Shown: positions 1,064 to 62,700 of the stretch, in pieces
Position numbering within the stretch: the stretch's first letter is position 1
Layout: each line of letters opens with the position of its first letter
NCBI RefSeq assembly: GCF_039654945.1
Contig: NW_027361918.1
Span: 6,138,001-6,202,000, forward strand
Reading direction: 5' to 3'
Source: Dendrobates tinctorius
Taxonomy: Eukaryota
DNA: 64,000 bases
Translations under genes and position numbers: made by a program
Notes under the pieces: generated by a model
Databases searched by the model: none
Seen by the model: the letters and a program-made list of their open reading frames with translations, nothing else
What the model was told of the DNA's origin: nothing

Positions 1064-2274
1064 CACTGCTCAAAAAAATAAAGAGAACACTAAAATCCCA
1101 CATCCTAGACATCTCTGAATGAAATATTCCAGTTGCAAATTTTTATTCATTGCATAGTGGAATGTGTCCAGAATAATAAAACTAACAATTATCAATGTAA
1201 ATCAAAATGAATATCCCATGGAGGTCTGGATTTGGAATGATACTCAAAATCAAAGAGGAAAATCAAATTACAGGCTGATCCAACTTCAGTGGAAATGCCT
1301 CATGACAAGGAAAAGATGCTCAGTATTGTGTGTGGCCTCCACGTGCCTGTATGACCTCCCTACCATGCCTGGGCATGCTCCTGACAATGCCAGAAGCGTC
1401 TTACCTGGGCCAAGGAGAAAAAGAACTGGACTGTTGTCAGTGGTCCAAGGTGTTGATTTCAGATGAAAGTAAATTTTGCTCTTCATTTGGAAATCACGGT
1501 CCCAGAGTCTGGAGGAAGAGTGGAGAGGCCACAATCCAAGCTGCTGGAGGTCTAGTGTGAAGTTTCCACAATCCGTGATGGTTTGGGGAGCCATGTCATC
1601 TGCTGGTGTATGTCCACTGTGTTTTATCAAGACCAAAGTCAGCGCAGCCGTCTACCAGGACATGTTAGAGCTCTTCATGCTTCCCTCTGCCGACAAGCTT
1701 TTTGGAGATGGAAATGTCATTTTCCAGCAGGACTTGGCCCCTGTCCACACTGCCAACAGTACCAATACCTGGTGTACACACAACAGTATCACTGGGCTTG
1801 ATTGGCAGCAAACTCGCCTGATCTTAACCCTATAGAGAATCTATGGAGTATTGTCAGGAGGAAGATGAGAGACACCAGACCCAACAATGCAGACGAGCTG
1901 AAGGCTGCGATCAAAGCGACCTGGGCTTCCATAACCCCTCAGCAGTGCCACAGGCTGATCACCTCCATGCCACGCCGCATTGATCCAGTAATTGATGCAG
2001 AAGGAGCCCGACCAAGTACTGAGGGCATTTACTGATCATACATTTCAGGAGGCCAACATTCTGGATTTTACAATCATTTTCCAAGTTGGTGCTATAAAGT
2101 ATTCTAATTTACTGAGATAATGACTTTTGGGTTCTCATTGGCTGTAAGCCATAATCATCAACATCACCAGAAATAAACCCGTGACATAGATCACTCTGTG
2201 TGTAATGGCTCTAGAGAATAGAGGAGAGTCACTGTCTGTATTGGAAGATATTCTCATTTTGGGAGAAGCCCCTG
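1064..2274 (+). mobile_element. Decayed Tc1/mariner transposon (apparently two families fused)
   Basis: Frameshifted DD34E motifs: [42 protein letters not shown]. Left terminus cactgctcaaaaaaataaag; right terminus ...cccctg|TA. Confidence 0.85.
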
Positions 2275-2749: not shown

Positions 2750-5117
2750 ATGGCTAATGGCTACCAGGGGGTGTCGTAATTCATCCGAAACCATTCTCTA
2801 CATTTGCGGGTGTTTGGTAATGAAGGAACATGACGGAATACATTAAAAAACTGTATTATGTGTAAACCTGGGTGATCAGGACGAGTCGTGGGCTCCACAT
2901 GTCGTCTGTTCTAGAAGAACCACAAGTGGTGTGAAGGGAAGAAAGAGCTTTCCTTGTGGGGTGCCGATGATCCGAAGGGAACCGCAAAATAATAGCAATG
3001 ACTGATACCGTGGAGAGCTTCAACCCTAAAAATAAGAAGGGAATTGTATACCCGGGCCTCCCGTCAGAGATTCACCCTGTGCCTCAAGGTCTAGGAATAC
3101 CTGTCCCTTCACCTCTGGAGAAACCTGAAGATCCACCTGATTCAGAAGATTCAGCTCAAGAAGAGCAGGGTTCTGACGGAGAATTTCACGCTTGTCCCAA
3201 AGAGCCACACCTTTCTTCGCAGCTTGATTTATATGATTTAGTCAGAGACTTGGATCTTCCTAAAAAAAAGAACCAGTTAACTTCTGGTACCTGCTTTTCA
3301 TGGTACAGAAGCAGAGAGAAGGAATTCCTTCCATACTTTTCTCAATACGGTGCTCTAGTGGATTCCAGTGATGTTCCTGGGTTGATGGAAACATTAAACA
3401 ATGAGCACAATATGACTGAGTGGAGACTCTTTGTTGATTCATCCCAAAAAACGTCAGAAAGCTGCTACCGCACAATGACAGCTACTGCACAATGGCAGCA
3501 AGTGTGCGTCAGTGCCTGTATGACATTCTGTGACTTGAAGGAAAGCTATGAGACTTTAGATTTTATTCTCAATAAACTTAAGTACGAGGATGAAGGATGG
3601 CCAATATGTGGTGATCTGACCTTCTCTCTTTGCTCCCTGGGCAGCAAGGAAATTACACAAAGTATCCATGCTTTTTGTGTTAATGGAGCAGCTCGGATAG
3701 GATTCATCACTGCAGCCAAAAAAAGTTGGTCAACAAGAACGTCTTTGCCACCTGGACTGAAGAACATAGTTTCAAAAAGTTTAGTTGATCCCACTAAAGT
3801 TTTCCTGACACCACTTCACATTAAGCTTGGACTGATGAAACAGTCTGTGTTTGTAAAAGCTCTATTGAAAGTAGGTGTTAGGCGGCAGGTTTCTGCATCT
3901 GCTCTGCAGGAATCCAGAGCCTCACATTCTGCGGTCTCCTGCTGTCTATCTACCGCAGAGGAAATTGCTTTGCAGCAGATCGCTCCAGAGACTAAGTCCC
4001 TCCGTTCTCCTACTGGGCATGCTCACGAGACGATCTCCCATTGGAGATTGGGAGTCATGTGCCCAGGTCCTGCTCCAGATCTCATTGGTCCATCTCGGAG
4101 ATCTGGAAGCTTCTGGAAGATCCCGGCTATAAAAAGTGCGCATAACCATTCTGCCATGCGCTAGTATAGTCTCTAGTTGCTACTGTGTGAATGATGATGG
4201 ATGTATGAACCTGCGAATGACTCATTAAGATCCCCTTCCTCTGATATTACGTATGTGTACAGGGACTTAGATTAGAGTCAGCGCCAGCGCGTGGCAAGCC
4301 TCAAGCCACTACAGCATCATCCACAGTGCTAGCGTCCGACATTGCGCCTGCTTCCTTGCTTTGTTGACTAGCGGCAGTGTTCTATGCCATGCTGCAGTTG
4401 CAGCCCTCTTTGGCGTCCGCAGTAGCGACGCCGCACGCACGGTAGGTCTAGACGGATGCAGCTCCTCTGCTTTGGGTTCAGCTCCTGTGACCATGTACCG
4501 TGCGTGCAGTTCTCCGAGACCTGTGAGTCCAACAGGCTCAGTACTTATGTTTATGTTCCAAGCGTCTCTGTGGAGATAACAGAGTACGCTCTGTGCACAC
4601 CGGGTGACGTTCAACCCCTGTGCGATATACCGCCATATTGTGCGTCTGCCATTATCTAGCAGCGGTGTAACACCTACTGCACGGTGGACCCCGGGCGACG
4701 AACGCACTTATTATTATTAGTGCGTTCCGCCGTCCCTAACAGTAGGAGAGACTTAACTACCTGTGTACCAATTTTCCGGGACTGTCGAAGCAAAACTGAA
4801 GGGTGGACATTTTTGCGTTCCAGATATTCAGAAACTCGTGAAGGACGTTGTGTTTAGAACTAAAATGAAAGATGCTGAAAAAAAGAGCTTGGGATTCTTT
4901 TAGAGAAGTCGTGAAGAAATTTCTAGGTAACAAAGAAGAACCCAAATTTAAGTCCATTGTGGAGAACATGCGGAAAGGTTTCAAAGCCATGTGGTTGTCT
5001 AATGAATTTGAAGTGACATTTTTTTATATTCCCATTTGGACTACGTTGCCGAAAACCTTGGTGCTGATAGTGAAGAGCAAATAGAAAGATTTCATCAGGA
5101 TATCAAGGAGATGGAAC
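2750..5117 (+). mobile_element. Chapaev3-like (CMC) DNA transposase pseudogene, 5' part
   Basis: Motifs YICG, GDQDESWAPHVVC, EWRLFVDSS, WPICGDL, LTPLHIKLGLMKQ, KFLGNK and ERFHQDIKEME across frameshifts. Interrupted at 3876-4741 and at 5118. Family name is from motif recall. Confidence 0.7.
3876..4741 (+). mobile_element. Solo LTR (866 bp) inside the Chapaev-like transposase
   Basis: Termini TGTTAGG...CCTAACA; 5-bp TSD GTAGG at 3871-3875 and 4742-4746; TATA-like ctataaaaag near 4127. Host coding sequence resumes after the insert. Confidence 0.9.
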
Positions 5118-7553: not shown

Positions 7554-8692
<1,139 letters not shown>

Positions 8693-24999: not shown

Positions 25000-25075
25000 G
25001 ATAAGCACGTCCTGTCACTGACCAGCGCAGCGGTATATAAGCCAGGAGGAGACGCCAGAGGACACCACTCATCCA
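25000..25075 (+). promoter_or_regulatory. TATA promoter of the small plus-strand gene
   Basis: GATAAG at 25000, TATATAA at 25034-25040, initiator-like ccactcatcc about 30 nt downstream, Kozak ATG at 25111. Confidence 0.65.
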
Positions 25076-25110
25076 GCCAGCAGCATCCGAGCCCTGACCT
25101 GCACCACAAC

Positions 25111-28100
25111 ATGGAAAGCCAGAGGACCAAGTGTAGCCGCGGAGTGTGCCTGCTCCTGGCCTGTCTCATCGCCAGCCTCCAGGGGGCAGGTGAGAATACC
25201 GGGGTCAGACGGGCAGTGCCTATCGTTCCTAACAATGGGGATTTCGTCTCAACCATTGGCAGACAATTGTGACAACAGTAGCCTGGTGATGGTGCAAGCT
25301 ACAGGAGTACAGGGTGTAGGACTACAGGTGTGTGGGGGTACAGAGATGAGGGGGTGCGAGCTGTCGGTACAGTGCTTTGTAGGTACAGGAATTAGAGGGT
25401 GCGAGCTGTCGATACAGGGCTATGTAGGTACAGGAATTAGAGGGTGCGAGCTGTCATTACAGGGCTATGTAGGTACAGGGGTGAGAGCTGTCGGTACAGG
25501 GCTTTGTAGGTACAGGAATGAGGGGGTGCGAGCTGTCGTTACAGGGCTATGTAGGTACAGGAATGAGCGGGTGCGAGCTGTCGGTACAGGGCTATGTAGG
25601 TACAGGAATTAGAGGGTGCGAGCTGTCGGTACAGGGCTTTGTAGGTACAGGAATGAGGGGGTGCGAGCTATCGGTACAGGGCTGTGTAGGTACAGGAATG
25701 AGGGGATGCGAGCTGTCGGTACAGGGCTATGTAGGCACAGGAATTAGAGGGTGCGAGCTGTCGGTACAGGGCTATGTAGGCACAGGAATTAGAGGGTGCG
25801 AGCCGTCGGTACAGGGCTATGTAGGCACAGGAATTAGAGGGTGCGAGCCGTCGTTACAGGGCTATGTAGGTACAGGGGTGCGAGCTGTCGTTACAGGGCT
25901 ATGTAGGTACAGGAATTAGAGGTTGCGAGCTGTCATTACAGGGCTATGTAGGTACAGGGGTGAGAGCTGTCGGTACAGGGCTTTGTAGGTACAGGAATTA
26001 GAGGGTGCGAGCCGTCGTTACAGGGCTATGTAGGTACAGGGGTGCGAGCTGTCGGTACAGGGCTTTGTAGGTACAGGAATTAGAGGGTGCGAGCTGTCGT
26101 TACAGGGCTATGTAGGTACAGGGGTGCGAGCTGTCGGTACAGTGCTTTGTAGGTACAGGAATTAGAGGGTGCGAGCTGTCGTTACAGGGCTATGTAGGTA
26201 CAGGAATTAGAGGGTGCGAGCTGTCATTACAGGGCTATGTAGGTACAGGGGTGAGAGCTGTCGGTACAGGGCTTTGTAGGTACAGGAATGAGGGGGTGCG
26301 AGCTGTCGTTACAGGGCTATGTAGGTACAGGAATGAGGGGGTGCGAGCTGTCGGTACAGGGCTTTGTAGGTACAGGAATGAGGGGGTGCGAGCTGTCGGT
26401 ACAGGGCTATGTAGGTACAGGAATTAGAGGGTGCGAGCCGTCGGTACAGGGCTATGTAGGTACAGGAATTAGAGGGTGCGAGCCGTCGTTACAGGGCTAT
26501 GTAGGTACAGGGGTGCGAGCTGTCGGTACAGGGCTTTGTAGGTACAGGAATTAGAGGGTGCGAGCTGTCGTTACAGGGCTATGTAGGTACAGGGCTGCGA
26601 GCTGTCGGTACAGGGCTTTGTAGGTACAGGAATAAGAGGGTGCGAGCTGTCATTACAGGGCTATGTAGGTACAGGGGTGAGAGCTGTCGGTACAGGGCTT
26701 TGTAGGTACAGGAATGAGGGGGTGCGAGCTGTCGTTACAGGGCTATGTAGGTACAGGAATGAGGGGGTGCGAGCTGTCGGTACAGGGCTGTGTAGATACA
26801 GGAATTAGAGGGTGCGAGCTGTCGTTACAGGGCTATGTAGGTACAGGGGTGAGGGGGTGCGAGCTGTCGGTACAGGGCTTTGTAGGTACAGGAATGAGAG
26901 GGTGCGAGCTGTCGGTACAGGGCTTTGTAGGTACAGGAATGAGAGGGTGCGAGCTGTCGGTACAGGGCTTTGTAGGTACAGGGGCGAGAGGGTGCGAGCT
27001 GTCGGTACAGGGCTGTGTAGGTACTGGAATGAGAGGGTGCGAGCTGTCGGTACAGGGCTGTGTAGGTACAGGAATGAGGGGGTGTGAGCTGTCGGTACAG
27101 GGCTGTGTAGGTACAGGAATGAGAGGGTCCGAGCTGTCGGTACAGGGGCGAGAGGGTGCGAGCTGTCGGTACAGGGCTGTGTAGATACAGGGGTGCGAGC
27201 TATCGTTACAGGGCTGTGTAGGTACAGGAATGAGAGGGTGCGAGCTATCGGTACAGGGCTGTGTAGGTACTGGAATGAGAGGGTGCGAGCTGTCGGTACA
27301 GGGCTGTGTAGGTACAGGAATGAGGGGGTGTGAGCCGTCGGTACAGGGCTTTGTAGGTACAGGGGCGAGAGGGTGCGAGCTTTCGGTACAGGGCTGTGTA
27401 GGTACAGGGGTGAGGGAGTGCGAGCTGTCTGTACAGGGGTAAGGGGGTGCGAGCTGTCTGTATAGGGGTGTGTAGGTACAGGAATGAGGGGGTGTGAGCT
27501 GTCGGTACAGGGCTATGTAGGTACAGGGGCGAGAGGGTGCAAGCTGTTGGTACAGGGCTGTGTAGGTACAGGGGTGAGGGAGTGCGAGCTGTCTGTACAG
27601 GGGTGAGGGGGTGCGAGCTGTCGGCACAGGGCTTTGTAGGTGCAGGGGTGAGAGCTGTCGGTACAGGGCTGTGTAGGTACAGGGGTGAGGGAGTGCGAGC
27701 TGTCGGTACAGGGCTTTGTAGGTGCAGGGGTGAAGGGGTGCGAGCTGTCGGTACAGGGCTTTGTAGGTGCAGGGGTGAGGGGGTGCGAGCTGTCGGTACA
27801 GGGCTTTGTAGGTGCAGGGGTGAGGGGGTGCGAGCTGTCGGTACAGGGCTTTGTAGGTGCAGGGGTGAGGGGGTGCGAGCTGTCGGTACAGGGCTTTGTA
27901 GGTGCAGGGGTGAGGGGGTGCGAGCTGTCGGTACAGGGCTGTGTAGGTACAGGGGTGAGGGGGGTGCGAGCTGTCGGTGCAGGGGTGAGAGCTGTCGGTA
28001 CAGGGCTTTGTAGGTATAGGGGTGAGGGGGGTGCGAGCTGTCGGTACAGGGCTGTGTAGATACAGGGGTGAGAGGGTGCAAGCTGTCGGTACAGGGCTGT

Positions 28101-30564
28101 GTAGATACAGGGGTGAGAGGGTGCGAGCTGTCGGTACAGGGCTATGTAGGTACAGGAATGAGAGGGCGCGAGCTGTCGTTACAGGGCTGTGTACGTCCAG
28201 GGGTGAGGGGGTGCGAGCTGTCGGTACAGGGCTTTGTAGGTACAGGGATGCGGGGCTGTGTACAGGGGTACGTGGTTACCCGGCTGTATAGGTGCAGGGG
28301 TACGTGGTTACCCGGCTGTATAGGTGCAGGGGTACCTGGTTACCCGGCTGTATAGGTGCAGGGGTACCTGGTTACCCGGCTGTATAGGTGCAGGGGTACC
28401 TGGTTACCCGGCTGTATAGGTGCAGGGGTACCTGGTTACCCGGCTGTATAGGTGCAGGGGTACCTGGTTACCCGGCTGTATAGGTACAGGGGTACCTGGT
28501 TACCCGGCTGTATAGGTACAGGGGTACCTGGTTACCCGGCTGTATAGGTACAGGGGTACGTGGTTACCCGGCTGTATAGGTACAGGGGTACCTGGTTACC
28601 CGGCTGTATAGGTGCAGGGGTACCTGGATACCCGGCTGTATAGGTACAGGAGTACCTGGATACCCGGCTGTATAGGTGCAGGGGTACCTGGATACCCGGC
28701 TGTATAGGTGCAGGGGTACCTGGATACCCGGCTGTATAGGTACAGGGGTACGCGGTTACCCGGCTGTATAGGTACAGGGGTACCTGGTTACCTGGCTGTA
28801 TAGGTACAGGGACGCCGGGCTGTAGAGGTTTGGGCCACGGCAGCATTTGCTTTACCAGATACAAGAGACGTGGAATCGCATGGAAGATAAATGGATTCAC
28901 CCTCCGAGGTCACGACCGGCCCACGCCACCTCCGGGGCTCTGCGGTACCACGCTGGGTGCAGATATGGCGACTCCAGCACATTGACCAATTCTTAGACTT
29001 GACTACGCACCCGGGAGGGAGAGTTTCCAGTGGAGCAGACGCCATTTCTTAGCGGTTTCCTCCGGCGGTTTTTCTAAATTTCTCCTCTTTTTCTGTTTTT
29101 TCCTCCATGTCCAATAATGTATCCACCGCTCATCACCGACGCCCTCACTGCGACCAACAATGTGTCCACCGCTCATCACCGACGCCCTCACTGTGACCAA
29201 CGTGTCCACCGCTCATCACTGACGCCCTCACTGTGACCAACCATGTGTCCACCGCTCATCACTGACGCCCTCACTGCAACCGTGTCCACCGCTCATCACC
29301 GACGCCATCACTGCGACCAACGTGTCCACCGCTCATCACCGACGCCCTCTCTGCGACCAACAATGTGTCCACCGCTCATCACCGACGCCCTCACTGCGAC
29401 CAACAATGTGTCCACCGCTCATCACGGACGCCCTCTCTGCGACCAACAATGTGTCCACCGCTCATCATTGACGCCCTCTCTGCGACCAACAATGTGTCCA
29501 CCGCTCATCACCGACGCCCTCACTGCAACCAACAATGTGTCCACCGCTCATCACTGACGCCCTCTCTGCAACCAACGCACAGCGGCGCAAAACACCACCT
29601 TCACAGGTACGTCTACATGCCGCAGCTAGTCTCCGCCACTGCAGAGCCGCAACAGGGCAACTAATCGTACATGTTCCTCGCAGGGGTCCCTGGCTGGGGT
29701 GTGGCGCTCCTGGTGATGATATCACTGATCCTCTCATTTCTGCTGCTCGTCATGATCTGCCTGGTAAGAGCCGTCCCCCGAAGACAGCAGCTCCTCCCCT
29801 CGAGCCCAGTAGTGGACCCCAGAGCGGCTCCTTCGTCCGATCCCAGTAACGACCCCCCAGGGGGGCTTCCTCTTCTCGAGCCCAGTAACATCCACTAGGG
29901 GGGCTCCTCTTCTCGAGCCCAGTAACAGCCCCCCAGGGGGGCTTCCTCTTCTCGAGCCCAGTAACATCCACTAGGGGGGCTCCTCTTCCCGAGGCCAGTA
30001 ACGGCCCCCCAGGGGGGGCTTCCTCTTCTCGAGCCCAGTAACATCCACTAGGGGGGCTCCTCTTCTCGAGGCCTGTAACATCCACTAGGGGGGCTTCCTC
30101 TTCTCGAGGCCTGTAACATCCCCTAGGGGGGCTTCCTCTTCTCGAGCCCAGTAACAGCCCCCCAGGGGGGCTTCCTCTTCTCGAGCCCAGTAACAGCCCC
30201 CCAGGGGGGCTTCCTCTTCTCGAGCCCAGTAACATCCACTAGGGGGGCTCCTCTTCTAGAGGCCAGTAACTGCCCCCAAGGGGGGCTCCTCTCCTCGAGC
30301 CCAGTAACTGCCCCCCCCCCAGGGGGGCTTCCTTTCCTTCCATGTGGCAGAAATGTCTCTCCTCTGTGATCATTTCCCCATTAGTGTAGAGATTGTGCAG
30401 TAATGCGGGGGTCGGCAGTTGTGCAGGGTCCATGTGTGTCCACTCCCTGCTGGTGTGGTTGGGGGTATGGTGAGGTCGGGGGTACGGCACCATCTAGACA
30501 GACATTCATTGGATTCTGTTTTCTAATACAGCCCCTGCTGAGGAATCAACGAAGGGGAAACTGA
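25111..30564 (+). CDS. Predicted spliced small type-I membrane glycoprotein with MUC1-like transmembrane segment (~71-76 aa)
   Basis: Exons 25111-25189, 29583-29606, 29684-29763, optional 30385-30399, and 30532-30564. All GT-AG and phase-compatible (1,1,0,0). Product MESQRTKCSRGVCLLLACLIASLQGAAAQNTTFTGVPGWGVALLVMISLILSFLLLVMICL[CRDCA]PLLRNQRRGN*. AATAAA at 30674. The 3' exon choice is uncertain. Confidence 0.65.
25345..28255. repeat. Minisatellite, ~45-bp unit with 35-bp variants (intron 1 of the small gene)
   Basis: Tandem gtgcgagctgtcggtacagggctatgtaggtacaggaattagagg. Confidence 0.95.
28256..28812. repeat. Minisatellite, 32-bp unit
   Basis: Tandem taggtgcaggggtacctggttacccggctgta. Confidence 0.95.
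29115..29575. repeat. Minisatellite, 40-43-bp unit ending at the micro-exon acceptor
   Basis: Tandem ccaacaatgtgtccaccgctcatcaccgacgccctcactgcga; the unit is not a multiple of 3. Confidence 0.92.
29795..30335. repeat. Minisatellite, 37-39-bp unit
   Basis: Tandem ctcgagcccagtaacatccactaggggggctcctctt and variants. Confidence 0.92.
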
Positions 30565-30673
30565 TCCAGCGTGGAGACCACCAATCCGCCATGGAGACCA
30601 CCGATCCGCCATGGAGACCAGCATCACGGAGTCGCTCGTTACATTGTATCACTGCTGTATATTGTTACTTGTG

Positions 30674-30679
30674 AATAAA
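30674..30679 (+). terminator. Polyadenylation signal of the small gene
   Basis: AATAAA 110 nt after the predicted stop, in an AT-rich context. Confidence 0.6.
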
Positions 30680-30945: not shown

Positions 30946-30951
30946 TTTATT
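30946..30951 (-). terminator. Polyadenylation signal of CAD
   Basis: tttatt on the + strand (AATAAA on -), about 330 nt after the CAD stop. Confidence 0.7.
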
Positions 30952-31278
30952 TAGAAAAAGGAGGAATGTAAGCAAAAAAAAATCACGAGGTGCTGCTCAT
31001 CAGTCCAACCGCCCTGCTGTCCTCACCCGCACACAAAACCGGTGGGTGAGGCAGGAAGACAGAGAAACCAGTCCTGCCATAAGGGGTGCTTTACTGCCTG
31101 CTTAAAAATTCCCCGGATGGGCGTGGCCTCAGGCGGAAGTCAAGTAGGAGGAGCCTCACTGGGTAACAGTAGAAAGATATGACAGGTGGGCATCCATAGA
31201 ACAGTCTGGAACCAGCCCAGGGACCAGGACACGTGGGGGAGGGGCAGCACAGAGTCACATGGTGCTCCGAGGGAAGGA

Positions 31279-62156
<30,878 letters not shown>

Positions 62157-62700
62157 GTGGTGAGCGGCTACTGCTCGGCCAGGCCGGATACCCAGACACG
62201 TGTTCTCGGAGTGGGTGGAGCCAAGGTGAAGGGCGGGACTGGAGCAGGCAGAAGCAATGAGAATATGGAGGCTGGGGGGCGGAGACTAGCGGCTCATTAA
62301 CTCCAAGATGGGAGGAGTCACAGCTCAGTCAGCGGCAATAGCAGAAAAGGCCACGCCCCGGGGCGGGCACAAGCACGCCTATAAATAGTCTGCCGGAGGC
62401 AAGCAGAGGAGAGGGAATGCCAGTCTGGTTCTCAGGTATGCCGGCAGCTGCTGGACGCCCCGCACCGCCCCGCACCGCACCGCACTCTTCCTGCAATTTC
62501 ACGCAGTTAGCTTGTAGCAGCTCTGAGCATCGCAACCAATCAGAGCGCGTGATTCACGTGTCCCGACAGGTAGCAGGATGTCAGCCACGCTGTGATTGGC
62601 TGTAGGATCCTGTCAGCCAATACTGAGTGTTGTCAGATCAGAGGAGCGCTGTAACCACGGCAACCACCGGCCGCACAGACCCGGCCACGTGACGTGCAGT
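62157..62700 (-). promoter_or_regulatory. CAD 5'UTR/promoter (CpG-rich; E-boxes, GC boxes, CCAAT boxes)
   Basis: CACGTG at 62197, 62555 and 62686; GGGCGGG at 62231 and 62361; CCAAT/ATTGG at 62536, 62595 and 62617; CTATAAATAG at 62379. Mammalian cad is a known Myc/E-box- and Sp1-driven promoter. Confidence 0.75.

What the first reader, a model, noticed from the sequence alone, without database searches (positions are those of the whole stretch)
25034..30679. Hidden micro-exon gene for a ~71-76 aa MUC1-TM-like micro-glycoprotein
Seen: TATATAA, a Kozak ATG, a 79-nt signal-peptide exon (G|GTGAGA), a 24-nt micro-exon (AAQNTTFT, with an N-x-T sequon), an 80-nt exon GVPGWGVALLVMISLILSFLLLVMICL|GTAAGA, an optional 15-nt exon CRDCA, a last exon PLLRNQRRGN* and AATAAA; all phases agree. 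Established: the human MUC1 TM region reads [27 protein letters not shown] followed by CQC, and CD52/CD24 are tiny glycan-display peptides. Inference: a mucin-family derivative without VNTR or SEA domain, presenting one N-glycan on a ~10-residue stalk, with possible juxtamembrane Cys for palmitoylation or dimerisation. Under 5% of the locus is coding, so ORF tracks miss it. I do not recognise it as a known CAD neighbour.
Basis: partly seen in the sequence, partly recalled or inferred. Interest (0 to 1): 0.82.

Follow-up and report, generated by a model that had tools for sequence, protein, structure and literature searches.

The report
Unannotated tiny membrane-protein gene beside CAD
Just downstream of the CAD gene, this poison-frog genome carries what looks like a real but unconfirmed small gene for a ~71-residue, single-pass membrane protein. 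Its resemblance to the human mucin MUC1 is confined to a short stretch at the membrane edge and does not show kinship.

Summary
TATATAA (25034), a Kozak ATG (25111), the exons 25111-25189, 29583-29606, 29684-29763 and 30532-30564, and AATAAA (30674) are all present, with GT/AG borders and matching phases.

They are more than chance:
- The exon-3 helix is the most hydrophobic 19-residue stretch in all six frames of the 64-kb window.
- Exon 1 is the best signal-peptide-like start in the window.
- The donors of exons 1, 2 and 3 rank 1st, 4th and 3rd of 620 GT sites in 24-31 kb.
- GC by codon position (0.57/0.45/0.75) matches the neighbouring CAD exons (0.60/0.41/0.73).

The optional 15-nt exon fails these tests: its donor ranks 310th of 620 and its GC3 is 0 of 5. 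The last exon is uncertain.

Expression is not shown, and my run search was underpowered. No relative turned up in any protein search.

The MUC1 link is weak. Similarity is 10 of 11 identities at GVPGWG-ALLV followed by generic hydrophobic residues, about 35 bits. PsbH shares VPGWG. The locus has no SEA or PTS domain, and its neighbour is CAD, which is not beside MUC1 in human.

Best reading: an unannotated, probably lineage-restricted type-I membrane microprotein gene, convergent with CAD (about 0.6).

The parts
25034..25040 (+). TATA box (TATATAA). An Inr-like CCACTCA lies about 33 nt downstream, near 25067, and there is no upstream ATG before 25111.
   Evidence: read directly from the sequence
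25111..25189 (+). Exon 1 coding part: MESQRTKCSRGVCLLLACLIASLQGA plus one base. Signal-peptide-like, with a basic n-region, a 12-residue h-region and a small-residue c-region. Ends in phase 1 at donor CAG|GTGAGA.
   Evidence: Best signal-like ATG start of the window. Donor ranks 1 of 620. GC3 21/26.
25190..29582 (+). Intron 1 (4393 nt). It is filled by minisatellites: 45-bp units at 25337-28255, 32-bp units at 28263-28811 and 43-bp units at 29111-29576. The stretch 29052-29580 has no AG before the acceptor. A CTGAC branch-point motif lies 26 nt before exon 2.
29583..29606 (+). Exon 2, a 24-nt micro-exon (phase 1 to 1) encoding (A)AQNTTFT, which contains an NTT sequon.
   Evidence: Donor ranks 4 of 620 and acceptor 52 of 619.
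29684..29763 (+). Exon 3 (80 nt, phase 1 to 0) encoding (G)VPGWGVALLVMISLILSFLLLVMICL, the transmembrane helix. The 77-nt intron before it has a CTAAT branch point 20 nt upstream.
   Evidence: The only 19-residue window with mean Kyte-Doolittle hydropathy >= 2.8 in six frames of 64 kb. Donor ranks 3 of 620 and acceptor 10 of 619. GC3 20/26. Branch point.
30385..30399 (+). The claimed optional 15-nt exon (CRDCA). Probably not an exon.
   Evidence: Donor GCA|GTAATG ranks 310 of 620. GC3 0/5.
30532..30564 (+). Proposed last coding exon, PLLRNQRRGN plus stop. This is the least certain part of the model.
   Evidence: Acceptor ranks 13 of 619. Rival acceptors lie at 30351 and in the 38-bp array. GC3 6/10.
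30674..30679 (+). AATAAA poly(A) signal, 110 nt after the stop.
   Evidence: The only + strand AATAAA/ATTAAA between 24.7 and 31.5 kb.
30946..31503 (-). 3' end of the neighbouring CAD gene. The reading-frame piece 31282-31503 holds the last coding exon (...[24 protein letters not shown]), with the stop just below 31282. The minus-strand AATAAA is at 30946-30951. The two genes converge, with their poly(A) signals about 270 nt apart.
   Evidence: CAD exons run up to about 62.2 kb. A CAD exon finds 112 aspartate carbamoyltransferase fragments.

Best explanation
This is a real but unannotated small gene lying tail-to-tail with CAD. A TATA promoter drives a transcript of about 0.4 kb, spliced from at least three well-defined exons plus a short last exon.

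The 71-residue precursor would enter the ER through a cleavable signal peptide. The likely cut is after the Ala run at the exon 1/2 junction. The transmembrane helix then stops transfer, leaving a mature protein of about 42-44 residues. It would have about 8-10 uncharged residues outside (QNTTFTGVPG), one helix, and a short basic tail inside, which agrees with the positive-inside rule.

With so little outside the membrane, it most likely acts through its helix, as a small accessory or partner subunit of another membrane protein. The helix contains a small-xxx-small motif (SLILS). The FXYD, KCNE and regulin microproteins work this way.

What is shown: the gene anatomy and its statistical support. 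What is inferred: transcription, signal-peptide cleavage, topology and function.

It is probably restricted to frogs or a narrower lineage, and it is not demonstrably a MUC1 relative.
For: - Coordinates, splice sites and phases are as claimed.
- The exon-3 helix is the single most hydrophobic stretch in six frames of 64 kb, at 3.17. The next best, at 10.5 kb, scores 2.68.
- Exon 1 is the top signal-like ATG start.
- In 100 dinucleotide shuffles there were 0.1 helix-like and 0.48 signal-like segments per window. Only 1 of 100 shuffles had both on one strand, in order, within 6 kb, before any demand on splice sites, phase, TATA or poly(A).
- The donors of exons 1, 2 and 3 rank 1st, 4th and 3rd of 620 GT sites.
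- Branch-point motifs lie 20-26 nt upstream of exons 2 and 3, and a 530-nt AG-free zone ends exactly at the exon-2 acceptor.
- GC by codon position is 0.57/0.45/0.75, against 0.60/0.41/0.73 for CAD and 0.53 for local unique non-coding DNA. P is about 1e-4.
- The only + strand poly(A) signal of the locus follows the stop by 110 nt.
Against: - There is no transcript evidence. The one holder of the stretch is a DNA run with unspliced contigs. Three possible RNA runs of the species hold nothing on it.
- There is no conservation evidence. No protein shares words with exon 1 or exon 3. Nothing reached E <= 0.001 among 1.84 billion representatives, and a degenerate DNA pattern found nothing in metagenomes.
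- One bird-like contig has no helix-like ORF within 5.7 kb downstream of CAD.
- The last exon is ambiguous.
- The scan read about 250,000 windows, so a pattern at roughly 1e-6 per window is not impossible by chance.
Confidence: 0.6

Rival explanations
1. It is a gene-like pattern that is not a functional gene. It may be a chance arrangement, or a young or dying locus that is transcribed weakly or not at all and makes no maintained protein.
For: No RNA contigs were found and no relatives anywhere. The locus sits in minisatellite-rich DNA, 36% of the window being tandem repeats. The tail exon is ambiguous, and one of the five claimed exons fails the tests. The scan covers a very large number of windows.
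Against: Independent signals coincide: helix, signal peptide, top-ranked donors, phases, codon-position GC, TATA and poly(A). My rough joint chance estimate is 1e-6 per window or less. The RNA search was underpowered, and this species is absent from the protein collection at the neighbouring CAD exon.
Confidence: 0.2
2. It is a relative or stripped-down remnant of a MUC1-type membrane mucin that kept only the signal-peptide and transmembrane exons. The repeat and SEA exons were lost or decayed into the intronic minisatellites.
For: The frog GVPGWGVALLV matches human [11 protein letters not shown] (sequence from PMC4534190) at 10 of 11 positions. The alignment scores 79, against 28.8 +/- 5.3 for 20,000 composition-preserving shuffles. 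The first intron holds a 45-bp (15-codon) array. The signal-peptide exon ends in phase 1, as in many mucin genes (own knowledge).
Against: - The match is about 35 bits. By my estimate that is expected over 100 times by chance in the library searched, and nothing was listed at E <= 0.001.
- VPGWG also begins the PsbH helix, so it is a recurrent membrane-edge motif.
- Beyond residue 11 only generic hydrophobic similarity remains.
- There is no SEA or other mucin domain.
- On the + strand the arrays encode Gly/Arg/Cys/Val-rich sequence, broken by indels, with GC3 0.42-0.49.
- The tail bears no likeness to the MUC1 cytoplasmic domain.
- The CxxC rests on the rejected exon.
- The locus is next to CAD.
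- Reviews place the origin of MUC1 in mammals (PMC12958477, PMC9564314).
Confidence: 0.1
3. The exons belong to a different or larger transcript. Exon 3 might be used with other, unseen exons, or the unspliced ORFs might be the products: 53 residues from exon 1, or 75 residues from the ATG at 29671.
For: Read-through ORFs exist: MESQ...GRQL of 53 residues and MFLAGVPGWG... of 75 residues. The minisatellites carry many cryptic AG|GT sites.
Against: The TATA box, Kozak ATG, signal peptide and poly(A) signal bracket a self-contained unit. Candidate extra cassette exons in intron 1 look non-coding, with GC3 0.42-0.49. Upstream DNA is transposon-derived, and CAD is on the other strand. No larger protein holds exon 3.
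Confidence: 0.1

Closest known systems
MUC1-C, the transmembrane subunit of human mucin 1
   Same: The helix starts with the same GVPGWG-ALLV, and both are type-I proteins. If the doubtful 15-nt exon were used, a Cys pair would follow the helix (CRDC against CQC).
   Different: There is no tandem-repeat mucin domain, no SEA domain, no 58-residue ectodomain and no 72-residue signalling tail. Similarity ends after 11 residues and is not significant database-wide. The chromosomal neighbourhood differs. MUC1 is held to have arisen in mammals (PMC12958477).
Single-pass accessory microproteins such as FXYD and KCNE (own knowledge)
   Same: Small size, one transmembrane helix, a short ectodomain that may carry an N-glycan sequon, and a short basic tail. 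The protein probably works through helix-helix contacts.
   Different: There is no FXYD motif or KCNE similarity, and no Pfam family matches. The ectodomain is even shorter. No partner is known.
CD52 and CD24, tiny glycan-display peptides
   Same: A very short mature peptide with a sequon behind a signal peptide.
   Different: Those are GPI-anchored, with the C-terminal hydrophobic stretch removed. Here the hydrophobic stretch is followed by a basic tail, which predicts a true transmembrane anchor. The sequon lies too close to the membrane for efficient glycosylation.
PsbH of photosystem II
   Same: VPGWGT at the start of its single helix. It was the best PDB match, at E about 1.2.
   Different: It is an unrelated plastid and cyanobacterial protein. 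It only shows that the motif recurs by convergence.

Membership tests
MUC1 / SEA-type membrane mucins | A Pro/Thr/Ser-rich tandem-repeat (mucin) domain encoded in a large exon | tested here: not met
   On the + strand the intronic arrays (45, 32, 43 and 38 bp) encode no PTS-rich open frame. Frames are broken by indels and stops, and GC3 is 0.42-0.49.
MUC1 / SEA-type membrane mucins | [quoted passage not shown] | tested here: not met
   A Pfam scan of all 52 + strand ORFs of 35 residues or more in 24.0-30.8 kb found no SEA. The only hits were repeat artefacts.
MUC1 / SEA-type membrane mucins | Significant sequence similarity of the transmembrane and cytoplasmic region to MUC1-C | tested here: inconclusive
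   Pairwise, the match is far above shuffles (79 against 28.8 +/- 5.3). It is only about 35 bits, with nothing at E <= 0.001 among 1.84 billion representatives. The tail is not similar, and PsbH shares the motif.
MUC1 / SEA-type membrane mucins | Conserved neighbourhood (TRIM46 and THBS3 in human, own knowledge), and the same exon border and phase at the transmembrane exon | tested here: not met
   The neighbour is CAD, convergent with this gene. The other flank is made of transposons. The exon border of human MUC1 could not be obtained with these tools, so that half is untested.
Type-I single-pass membrane microprotein (signal peptide plus one helix) | An N-terminal signal peptide with n, h and c regions | tested here: inconclusive
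   Exon 1 has a basic n-region, a 12-residue hydrophobic core and small residues (GAAA) at the junction. It is the best such start in the window. No dedicated predictor was available, and the joined product was not submitted.
Type-I single-pass membrane microprotein (signal peptide plus one helix) | One hydrophobic helix of about 20 residues with positive charges on the cytoplasmic side | tested here: met
   Mean hydropathy is 3.17 over 19 residues. The ectodomain is uncharged, and the tail PLLRNQRRGN carries three Arg.
Type-I single-pass membrane microprotein (signal peptide plus one helix) | The gene is transcribed and spliced as modelled | tested here: inconclusive
   No RNA holder was found. 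Three possible RNA runs were empty. The search was underpowered for a small mRNA.

The most novel reading that the evidence does not exclude
The frog gene is a true relative of the module that supplied MUC1-C with its transmembrane and juxtamembrane segment. That piece of MUC1, thought to be a mammalian invention, would then descend from an older free-standing micro-membrane-protein gene that survives in amphibians.
Probability: 0.07. Interest if true: 0.65.

Novelty: new member of a known kind. Interest (0 to 1): 0.4.

Why it matters
If transcribed, this would be an example of a protein-coding gene that annotation pipelines and ORF tracks miss. Under 5% of the locus is coding, it has a 24-nt micro-exon, and its introns are stuffed with minisatellites. 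It would add an orphan single-pass microprotein to the frog membrane proteome. Proteins of this class often regulate channels, pumps or receptors. The MUC1 angle would matter for the origin of MUC1-C, but it is currently weak. If the gene is not transcribed, the case is a useful calibration of how gene-like a short pattern can look.

Tried and rejected
- **Sequencing runs.** Only a DNA run holds the stretch, and three possible RNA runs of the species are empty. I gave the whole 5.6-kb stretch, of which exons supply only about 5% of the sampled words. That is right at the tool's holder threshold, so the blank is weak.
- **Word searches.** The natural ORFs around exon 3 (29671-29895) and exon 1 (25111-25269) found no candidates.
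- **Exhaustive HMMER search.** The exon-3 ORF against 1.84 billion representatives gave nothing at E <= 0.001.
- **PDB and Pfam.** The only PDB matches were PsbH, at E about 1. No Pfam family matched.
- **Metagenome scan.** A degenerate pattern for VPGWGVALLV, written so that the Ile-containing mammalian MUC1 form would not match, gave 0 hits.
- **Calibration with a CAD exon.** It found 112 fragments, the best 87% identical and none from this species. Blanks for the micro-gene therefore say little about frogs.
- **One non-mammal-like contig, L001.** It looks avian and has no helix-like ORF within 5.7 kb downstream of CAD.
- **Literature.** It supplied the human MUC1 helix sequence and the view that MUC1 arose in mammals. 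It did not supply the residue-level exon border.
- **Earlier notes.** Nothing on this place.
- **Rfam on the window.** No hits.
- **Rejected readings.** The 15-nt CRDCA exon. Extra cassette exons in intron 1. The C-rich 2449-codon ORF at 54951-62300 as a mucin; it is a 27-bp satellite open in many frames, lying inside CAD intron 1.
- **Left out by rule.** The joined spliced product was not built for or sent to any search, fold or look-up tool. The exons were searched one by one, by reference.
Full report
**Observation**

Reading the window at the given places confirms every element:
- TATATAA lies at 25034-25040.
- An ATG in a strong context (CACAACATGG) lies at 25111, with no earlier ATG after the likely start site.
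- Exon 1 coding sequence is 25111-25189 (79 nt, CAG|GTGAGA).
- A 24-nt exon lies at 29583-29606 (CAG|GTACGT).
- An 80-nt exon lies at 29684-29763 (CTG|GTAAGA).
- A 15-nt candidate lies at 30385-30399 (GCA|GTAATG).
- The last coding piece is 30532-30564, ending in TGA.
- AATAAA lies at 30674-30679.

The phases (0, 1, 1, 0, 0) agree with or without the 15-nt piece. Translated exon by exon, the peptides are as reported: MESQRTKCSRGVCLLLACLIASLQGA, AQNTTFT, VPGWGVALLVMISLILSFLLLVMICL, CRDCA and PLLRNQRRGN.

**Surroundings**

Earlier notes of this scan name the genome as the dyeing poison frog.

CAD lies in this same window on the minus strand. Its first coding exon is near 62.2 kb. Its last (...[24 protein letters not shown]) lies within 31282-31503, with the stop just below 31282. 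Its poly(A) signal is at 30946-30951. A CAD exon finds 112 aspartate carbamoyltransferase fragments.

The micro-gene is therefore the convergent 3' neighbour of CAD. Their poly(A) signals are about 270 nt apart.

The other flank (1-24 kb) is transposon debris: Tc1-like pieces, a LINE at 13-17 kb and an LTR-type reverse transcriptase at 18.5-20.4 kb.

Tandem repeats make up 36% of the window. The introns of the micro-gene are nearly all minisatellite:
- 45-bp units at 25337-28255.
- 32-bp units at 28263-28811.
- 43-bp units at 29111-29576.
- 38-bp units at 29792-30316.

**Is it more than chance?**

Several independent measures say yes.
- The exon-3 peptide holds the only 19-residue window with mean Kyte-Doolittle hydropathy of 2.8 or more in all six frames of the 64 kb. 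It scores 3.17, and the runner-up scores 2.68.
- The exon-1 start is the best signal-peptide-like ATG of the window.
- In 100 dinucleotide-preserving shuffles, helix-like segments occurred 0.1 times and signal-like starts 0.48 times per window. Only 1 shuffle in 100 had both on one strand, in the right order, within 6 kb. That is before asking for splice sites, phase, TATA or poly(A).
- I scored donors with an approximate vertebrate matrix written from memory. The donors of exons 1, 2 and 3 rank 1st, 4th and 3rd among 620 GT dinucleotides in 24-31 kb. The acceptors of exons 3 and 5 rank 10th and 13th of 619, behind repeated sites in the 38-bp array.
- Branch-point motifs sit 26 nt (CTGAC) and 20 nt (CTAAT) before exons 2 and 3. 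A 530-nt AG-free zone spans the whole 43-bp array and ends exactly at the exon-2 acceptor.
- GC by codon position in exons 1, 2, 3 and 5 is 0.57/0.45/0.75. That is almost the profile of the CAD exons next door (0.60/0.41/0.73). Unique non-coding DNA of the locus is 0.53. The GC3 excess has P of about 1e-4.

My rough joint estimate is 1e-6 per window or less. That is small, but not negligible for a scan of some 250,000 windows.

**Corrections to the model**

The 15-nt CRDCA exon fails the same tests. Its donor ranks 310th of 620, and none of its five codons ends in G or C. I reject it, and with it the juxtamembrane Cys pair.

Intron 4 is 132 nt and open in frame, so retaining it would give a 59-residue tail. 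Counted by hand from that sequence, its GC3 is 21 of 44, which looks non-coding.

A strong acceptor at 30351 would give the tail KCLSSVIISPLV. Repeated acceptors in the 38-bp array are also possible. The tail is therefore the least certain part. Exons 1-3 are the robust core.

Candidate extra cassette exons inside intron 1 exist only within the 45-bp array, and they look non-coding.

**Expression**

Expression is not shown. The only holder of the stretch is a DNA run whose contigs run unspliced across exon borders. Three runs guessed to be RNA, from one study of the same species, put no contig on it.

This blank is weak, and partly my doing. I searched with the full 5.6 kb, of which the mRNA would supply only about 5% of the sampled words. 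That is the tool's threshold.

**Relatives**

None were found.
- The natural ORFs that contain exon 3 and exon 1 share no word triplets with any protein of compatible length.
- The exhaustive search of 1.84 billion representatives lists nothing at E <= 0.001.
- Pfam finds nothing.
- A degenerate DNA pattern finds nothing in metagenomes.

A calibration shows that this species is not represented in the collection even for the adjacent CAD exon, where the best match is 87% identical. These blanks therefore do not show absence in frogs.

One bird-like contig reaching 5.7 kb beyond CAD has no helix-like ORF.

That also kept the exact-sequence look-ups out of reach.

**MUC1**

The human sequence [41 protein letters not shown] comes from PMC4534190. 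Against it, the frog G+exon 3 has 12 of 27 identities, 10 of them in the first 11 residues. The score is 79, against 28.8 +/- 5.3 for 20,000 shuffles.

That is real pairwise similarity, but only about 35 bits. Nothing reached E <= 0.001 in the large library. The best PDB matches are PsbH proteins that start their helix with VPGWGT or PGWGT, at E about 1, so the motif recurs at membrane edges.

No SEA or mucin domain is encoded. The arrays are not PTS-coding on this strand, and the tail is unlike MUC1's. The neighbour is CAD rather than TRIM46 or THBS3 (own knowledge for human). Reviews place MUC1's origin in mammals (PMC12958477, PMC9564314).

Membership is therefore not supported. A distant link cannot be excluded.

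**Likely working**

A TATA-driven transcript of about 0.4 kb would encode a 71-residue precursor. The signal peptide has a 12-residue core, too short for a membrane anchor. It is probably cut after the Ala run made at the exon 1/2 junction. The helix then stops transfer, giving a protein of about 42-44 residues with roughly 8-10 uncharged residues outside and a basic tail inside. That fits the positive-inside rule.

The Asn of NTT lies about 9-11 residues before the helix. That is under the 12-14 residues generally needed by the oligosaccharyltransferase (own knowledge), so a displayed N-glycan is doubtful.

With almost no ectodomain, action through the helix is the most plausible role. The helix contains SLILS, a small-xxx-small motif. 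The protein would then serve as a partner or regulator of another membrane protein. This is inference.

**Verdict**

The MUC1 and glycan-display interpretation is mostly unsupported. Expression and conservation remain open.

My odds:
- A real small membrane-protein gene: 0.6.
- A non-functional pattern: 0.2.
- A MUC1-type relative or relic: 0.1.
- Part of another transcript: 0.1.

Noticed in passing
window 54951-62300 (+), array 55002-62053: A 2449-codon ATG-to-stop ORF translates as [10 protein letters not shown]-type repeats and looks like a mucin. It is a 7-kb C-rich 27-bp satellite (about 250 copies, GC skew -0.9) that is open in several frames. It lies inside the first intron of CAD, between exon pieces at about 62.2 kb and 54.7-54.9 kb.
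   Followed up: partly
window 31282-62285 (-): Nearly the whole CAD gene is here, from the first coding exon to the last. Its introns are packed with minisatellites of 36-48 bp units, among them a 3-kb array of 39-bp units at 51748-54725.
   Followed up: partly
window 26836-28275 (-): On the minus strand the 45-bp intronic array reads as a 480-codon open frame of SPVPTARTPSPLYLH-like repeats, rich in Pro, Thr and Ser. This is most likely a side effect of a 15-codon period. There is no promoter or gene context for it downstream of CAD.
   Followed up: no
window 29052-29580 (+): The 43-bp array contains no AG dinucleotide for 530 nt, and the first AG after it is the predicted exon-2 acceptor. 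The last unit carries the variant CTGAC, which makes a branch-point motif. The minisatellite may itself serve as a long AG-exclusion zone.
   Followed up: partly
window 2971-4161 (+): A 397-codon open frame (388 from its ATG) has no Pfam match. It lies between Tc1-like transposase pieces at 1473-2032 (+) and 7587-8525 (-). It is probably transposon-borne.
   Followed up: no
window 25337-28255 (+): Each unit of the 45-bp array carries donor-like and acceptor-like motifs (TGTAG|GTACAG|G). Intron 1 therefore offers dozens of cryptic splice sites between exon 1 and the micro-exon.
   Followed up: no
window 30572-30620 (+): A 20-bp unit (TGGAGACCACCAATCCGCCA) is repeated 2.5 times in the predicted 3' UTR, between the stop and the poly(A) signal.
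   Followed up: no
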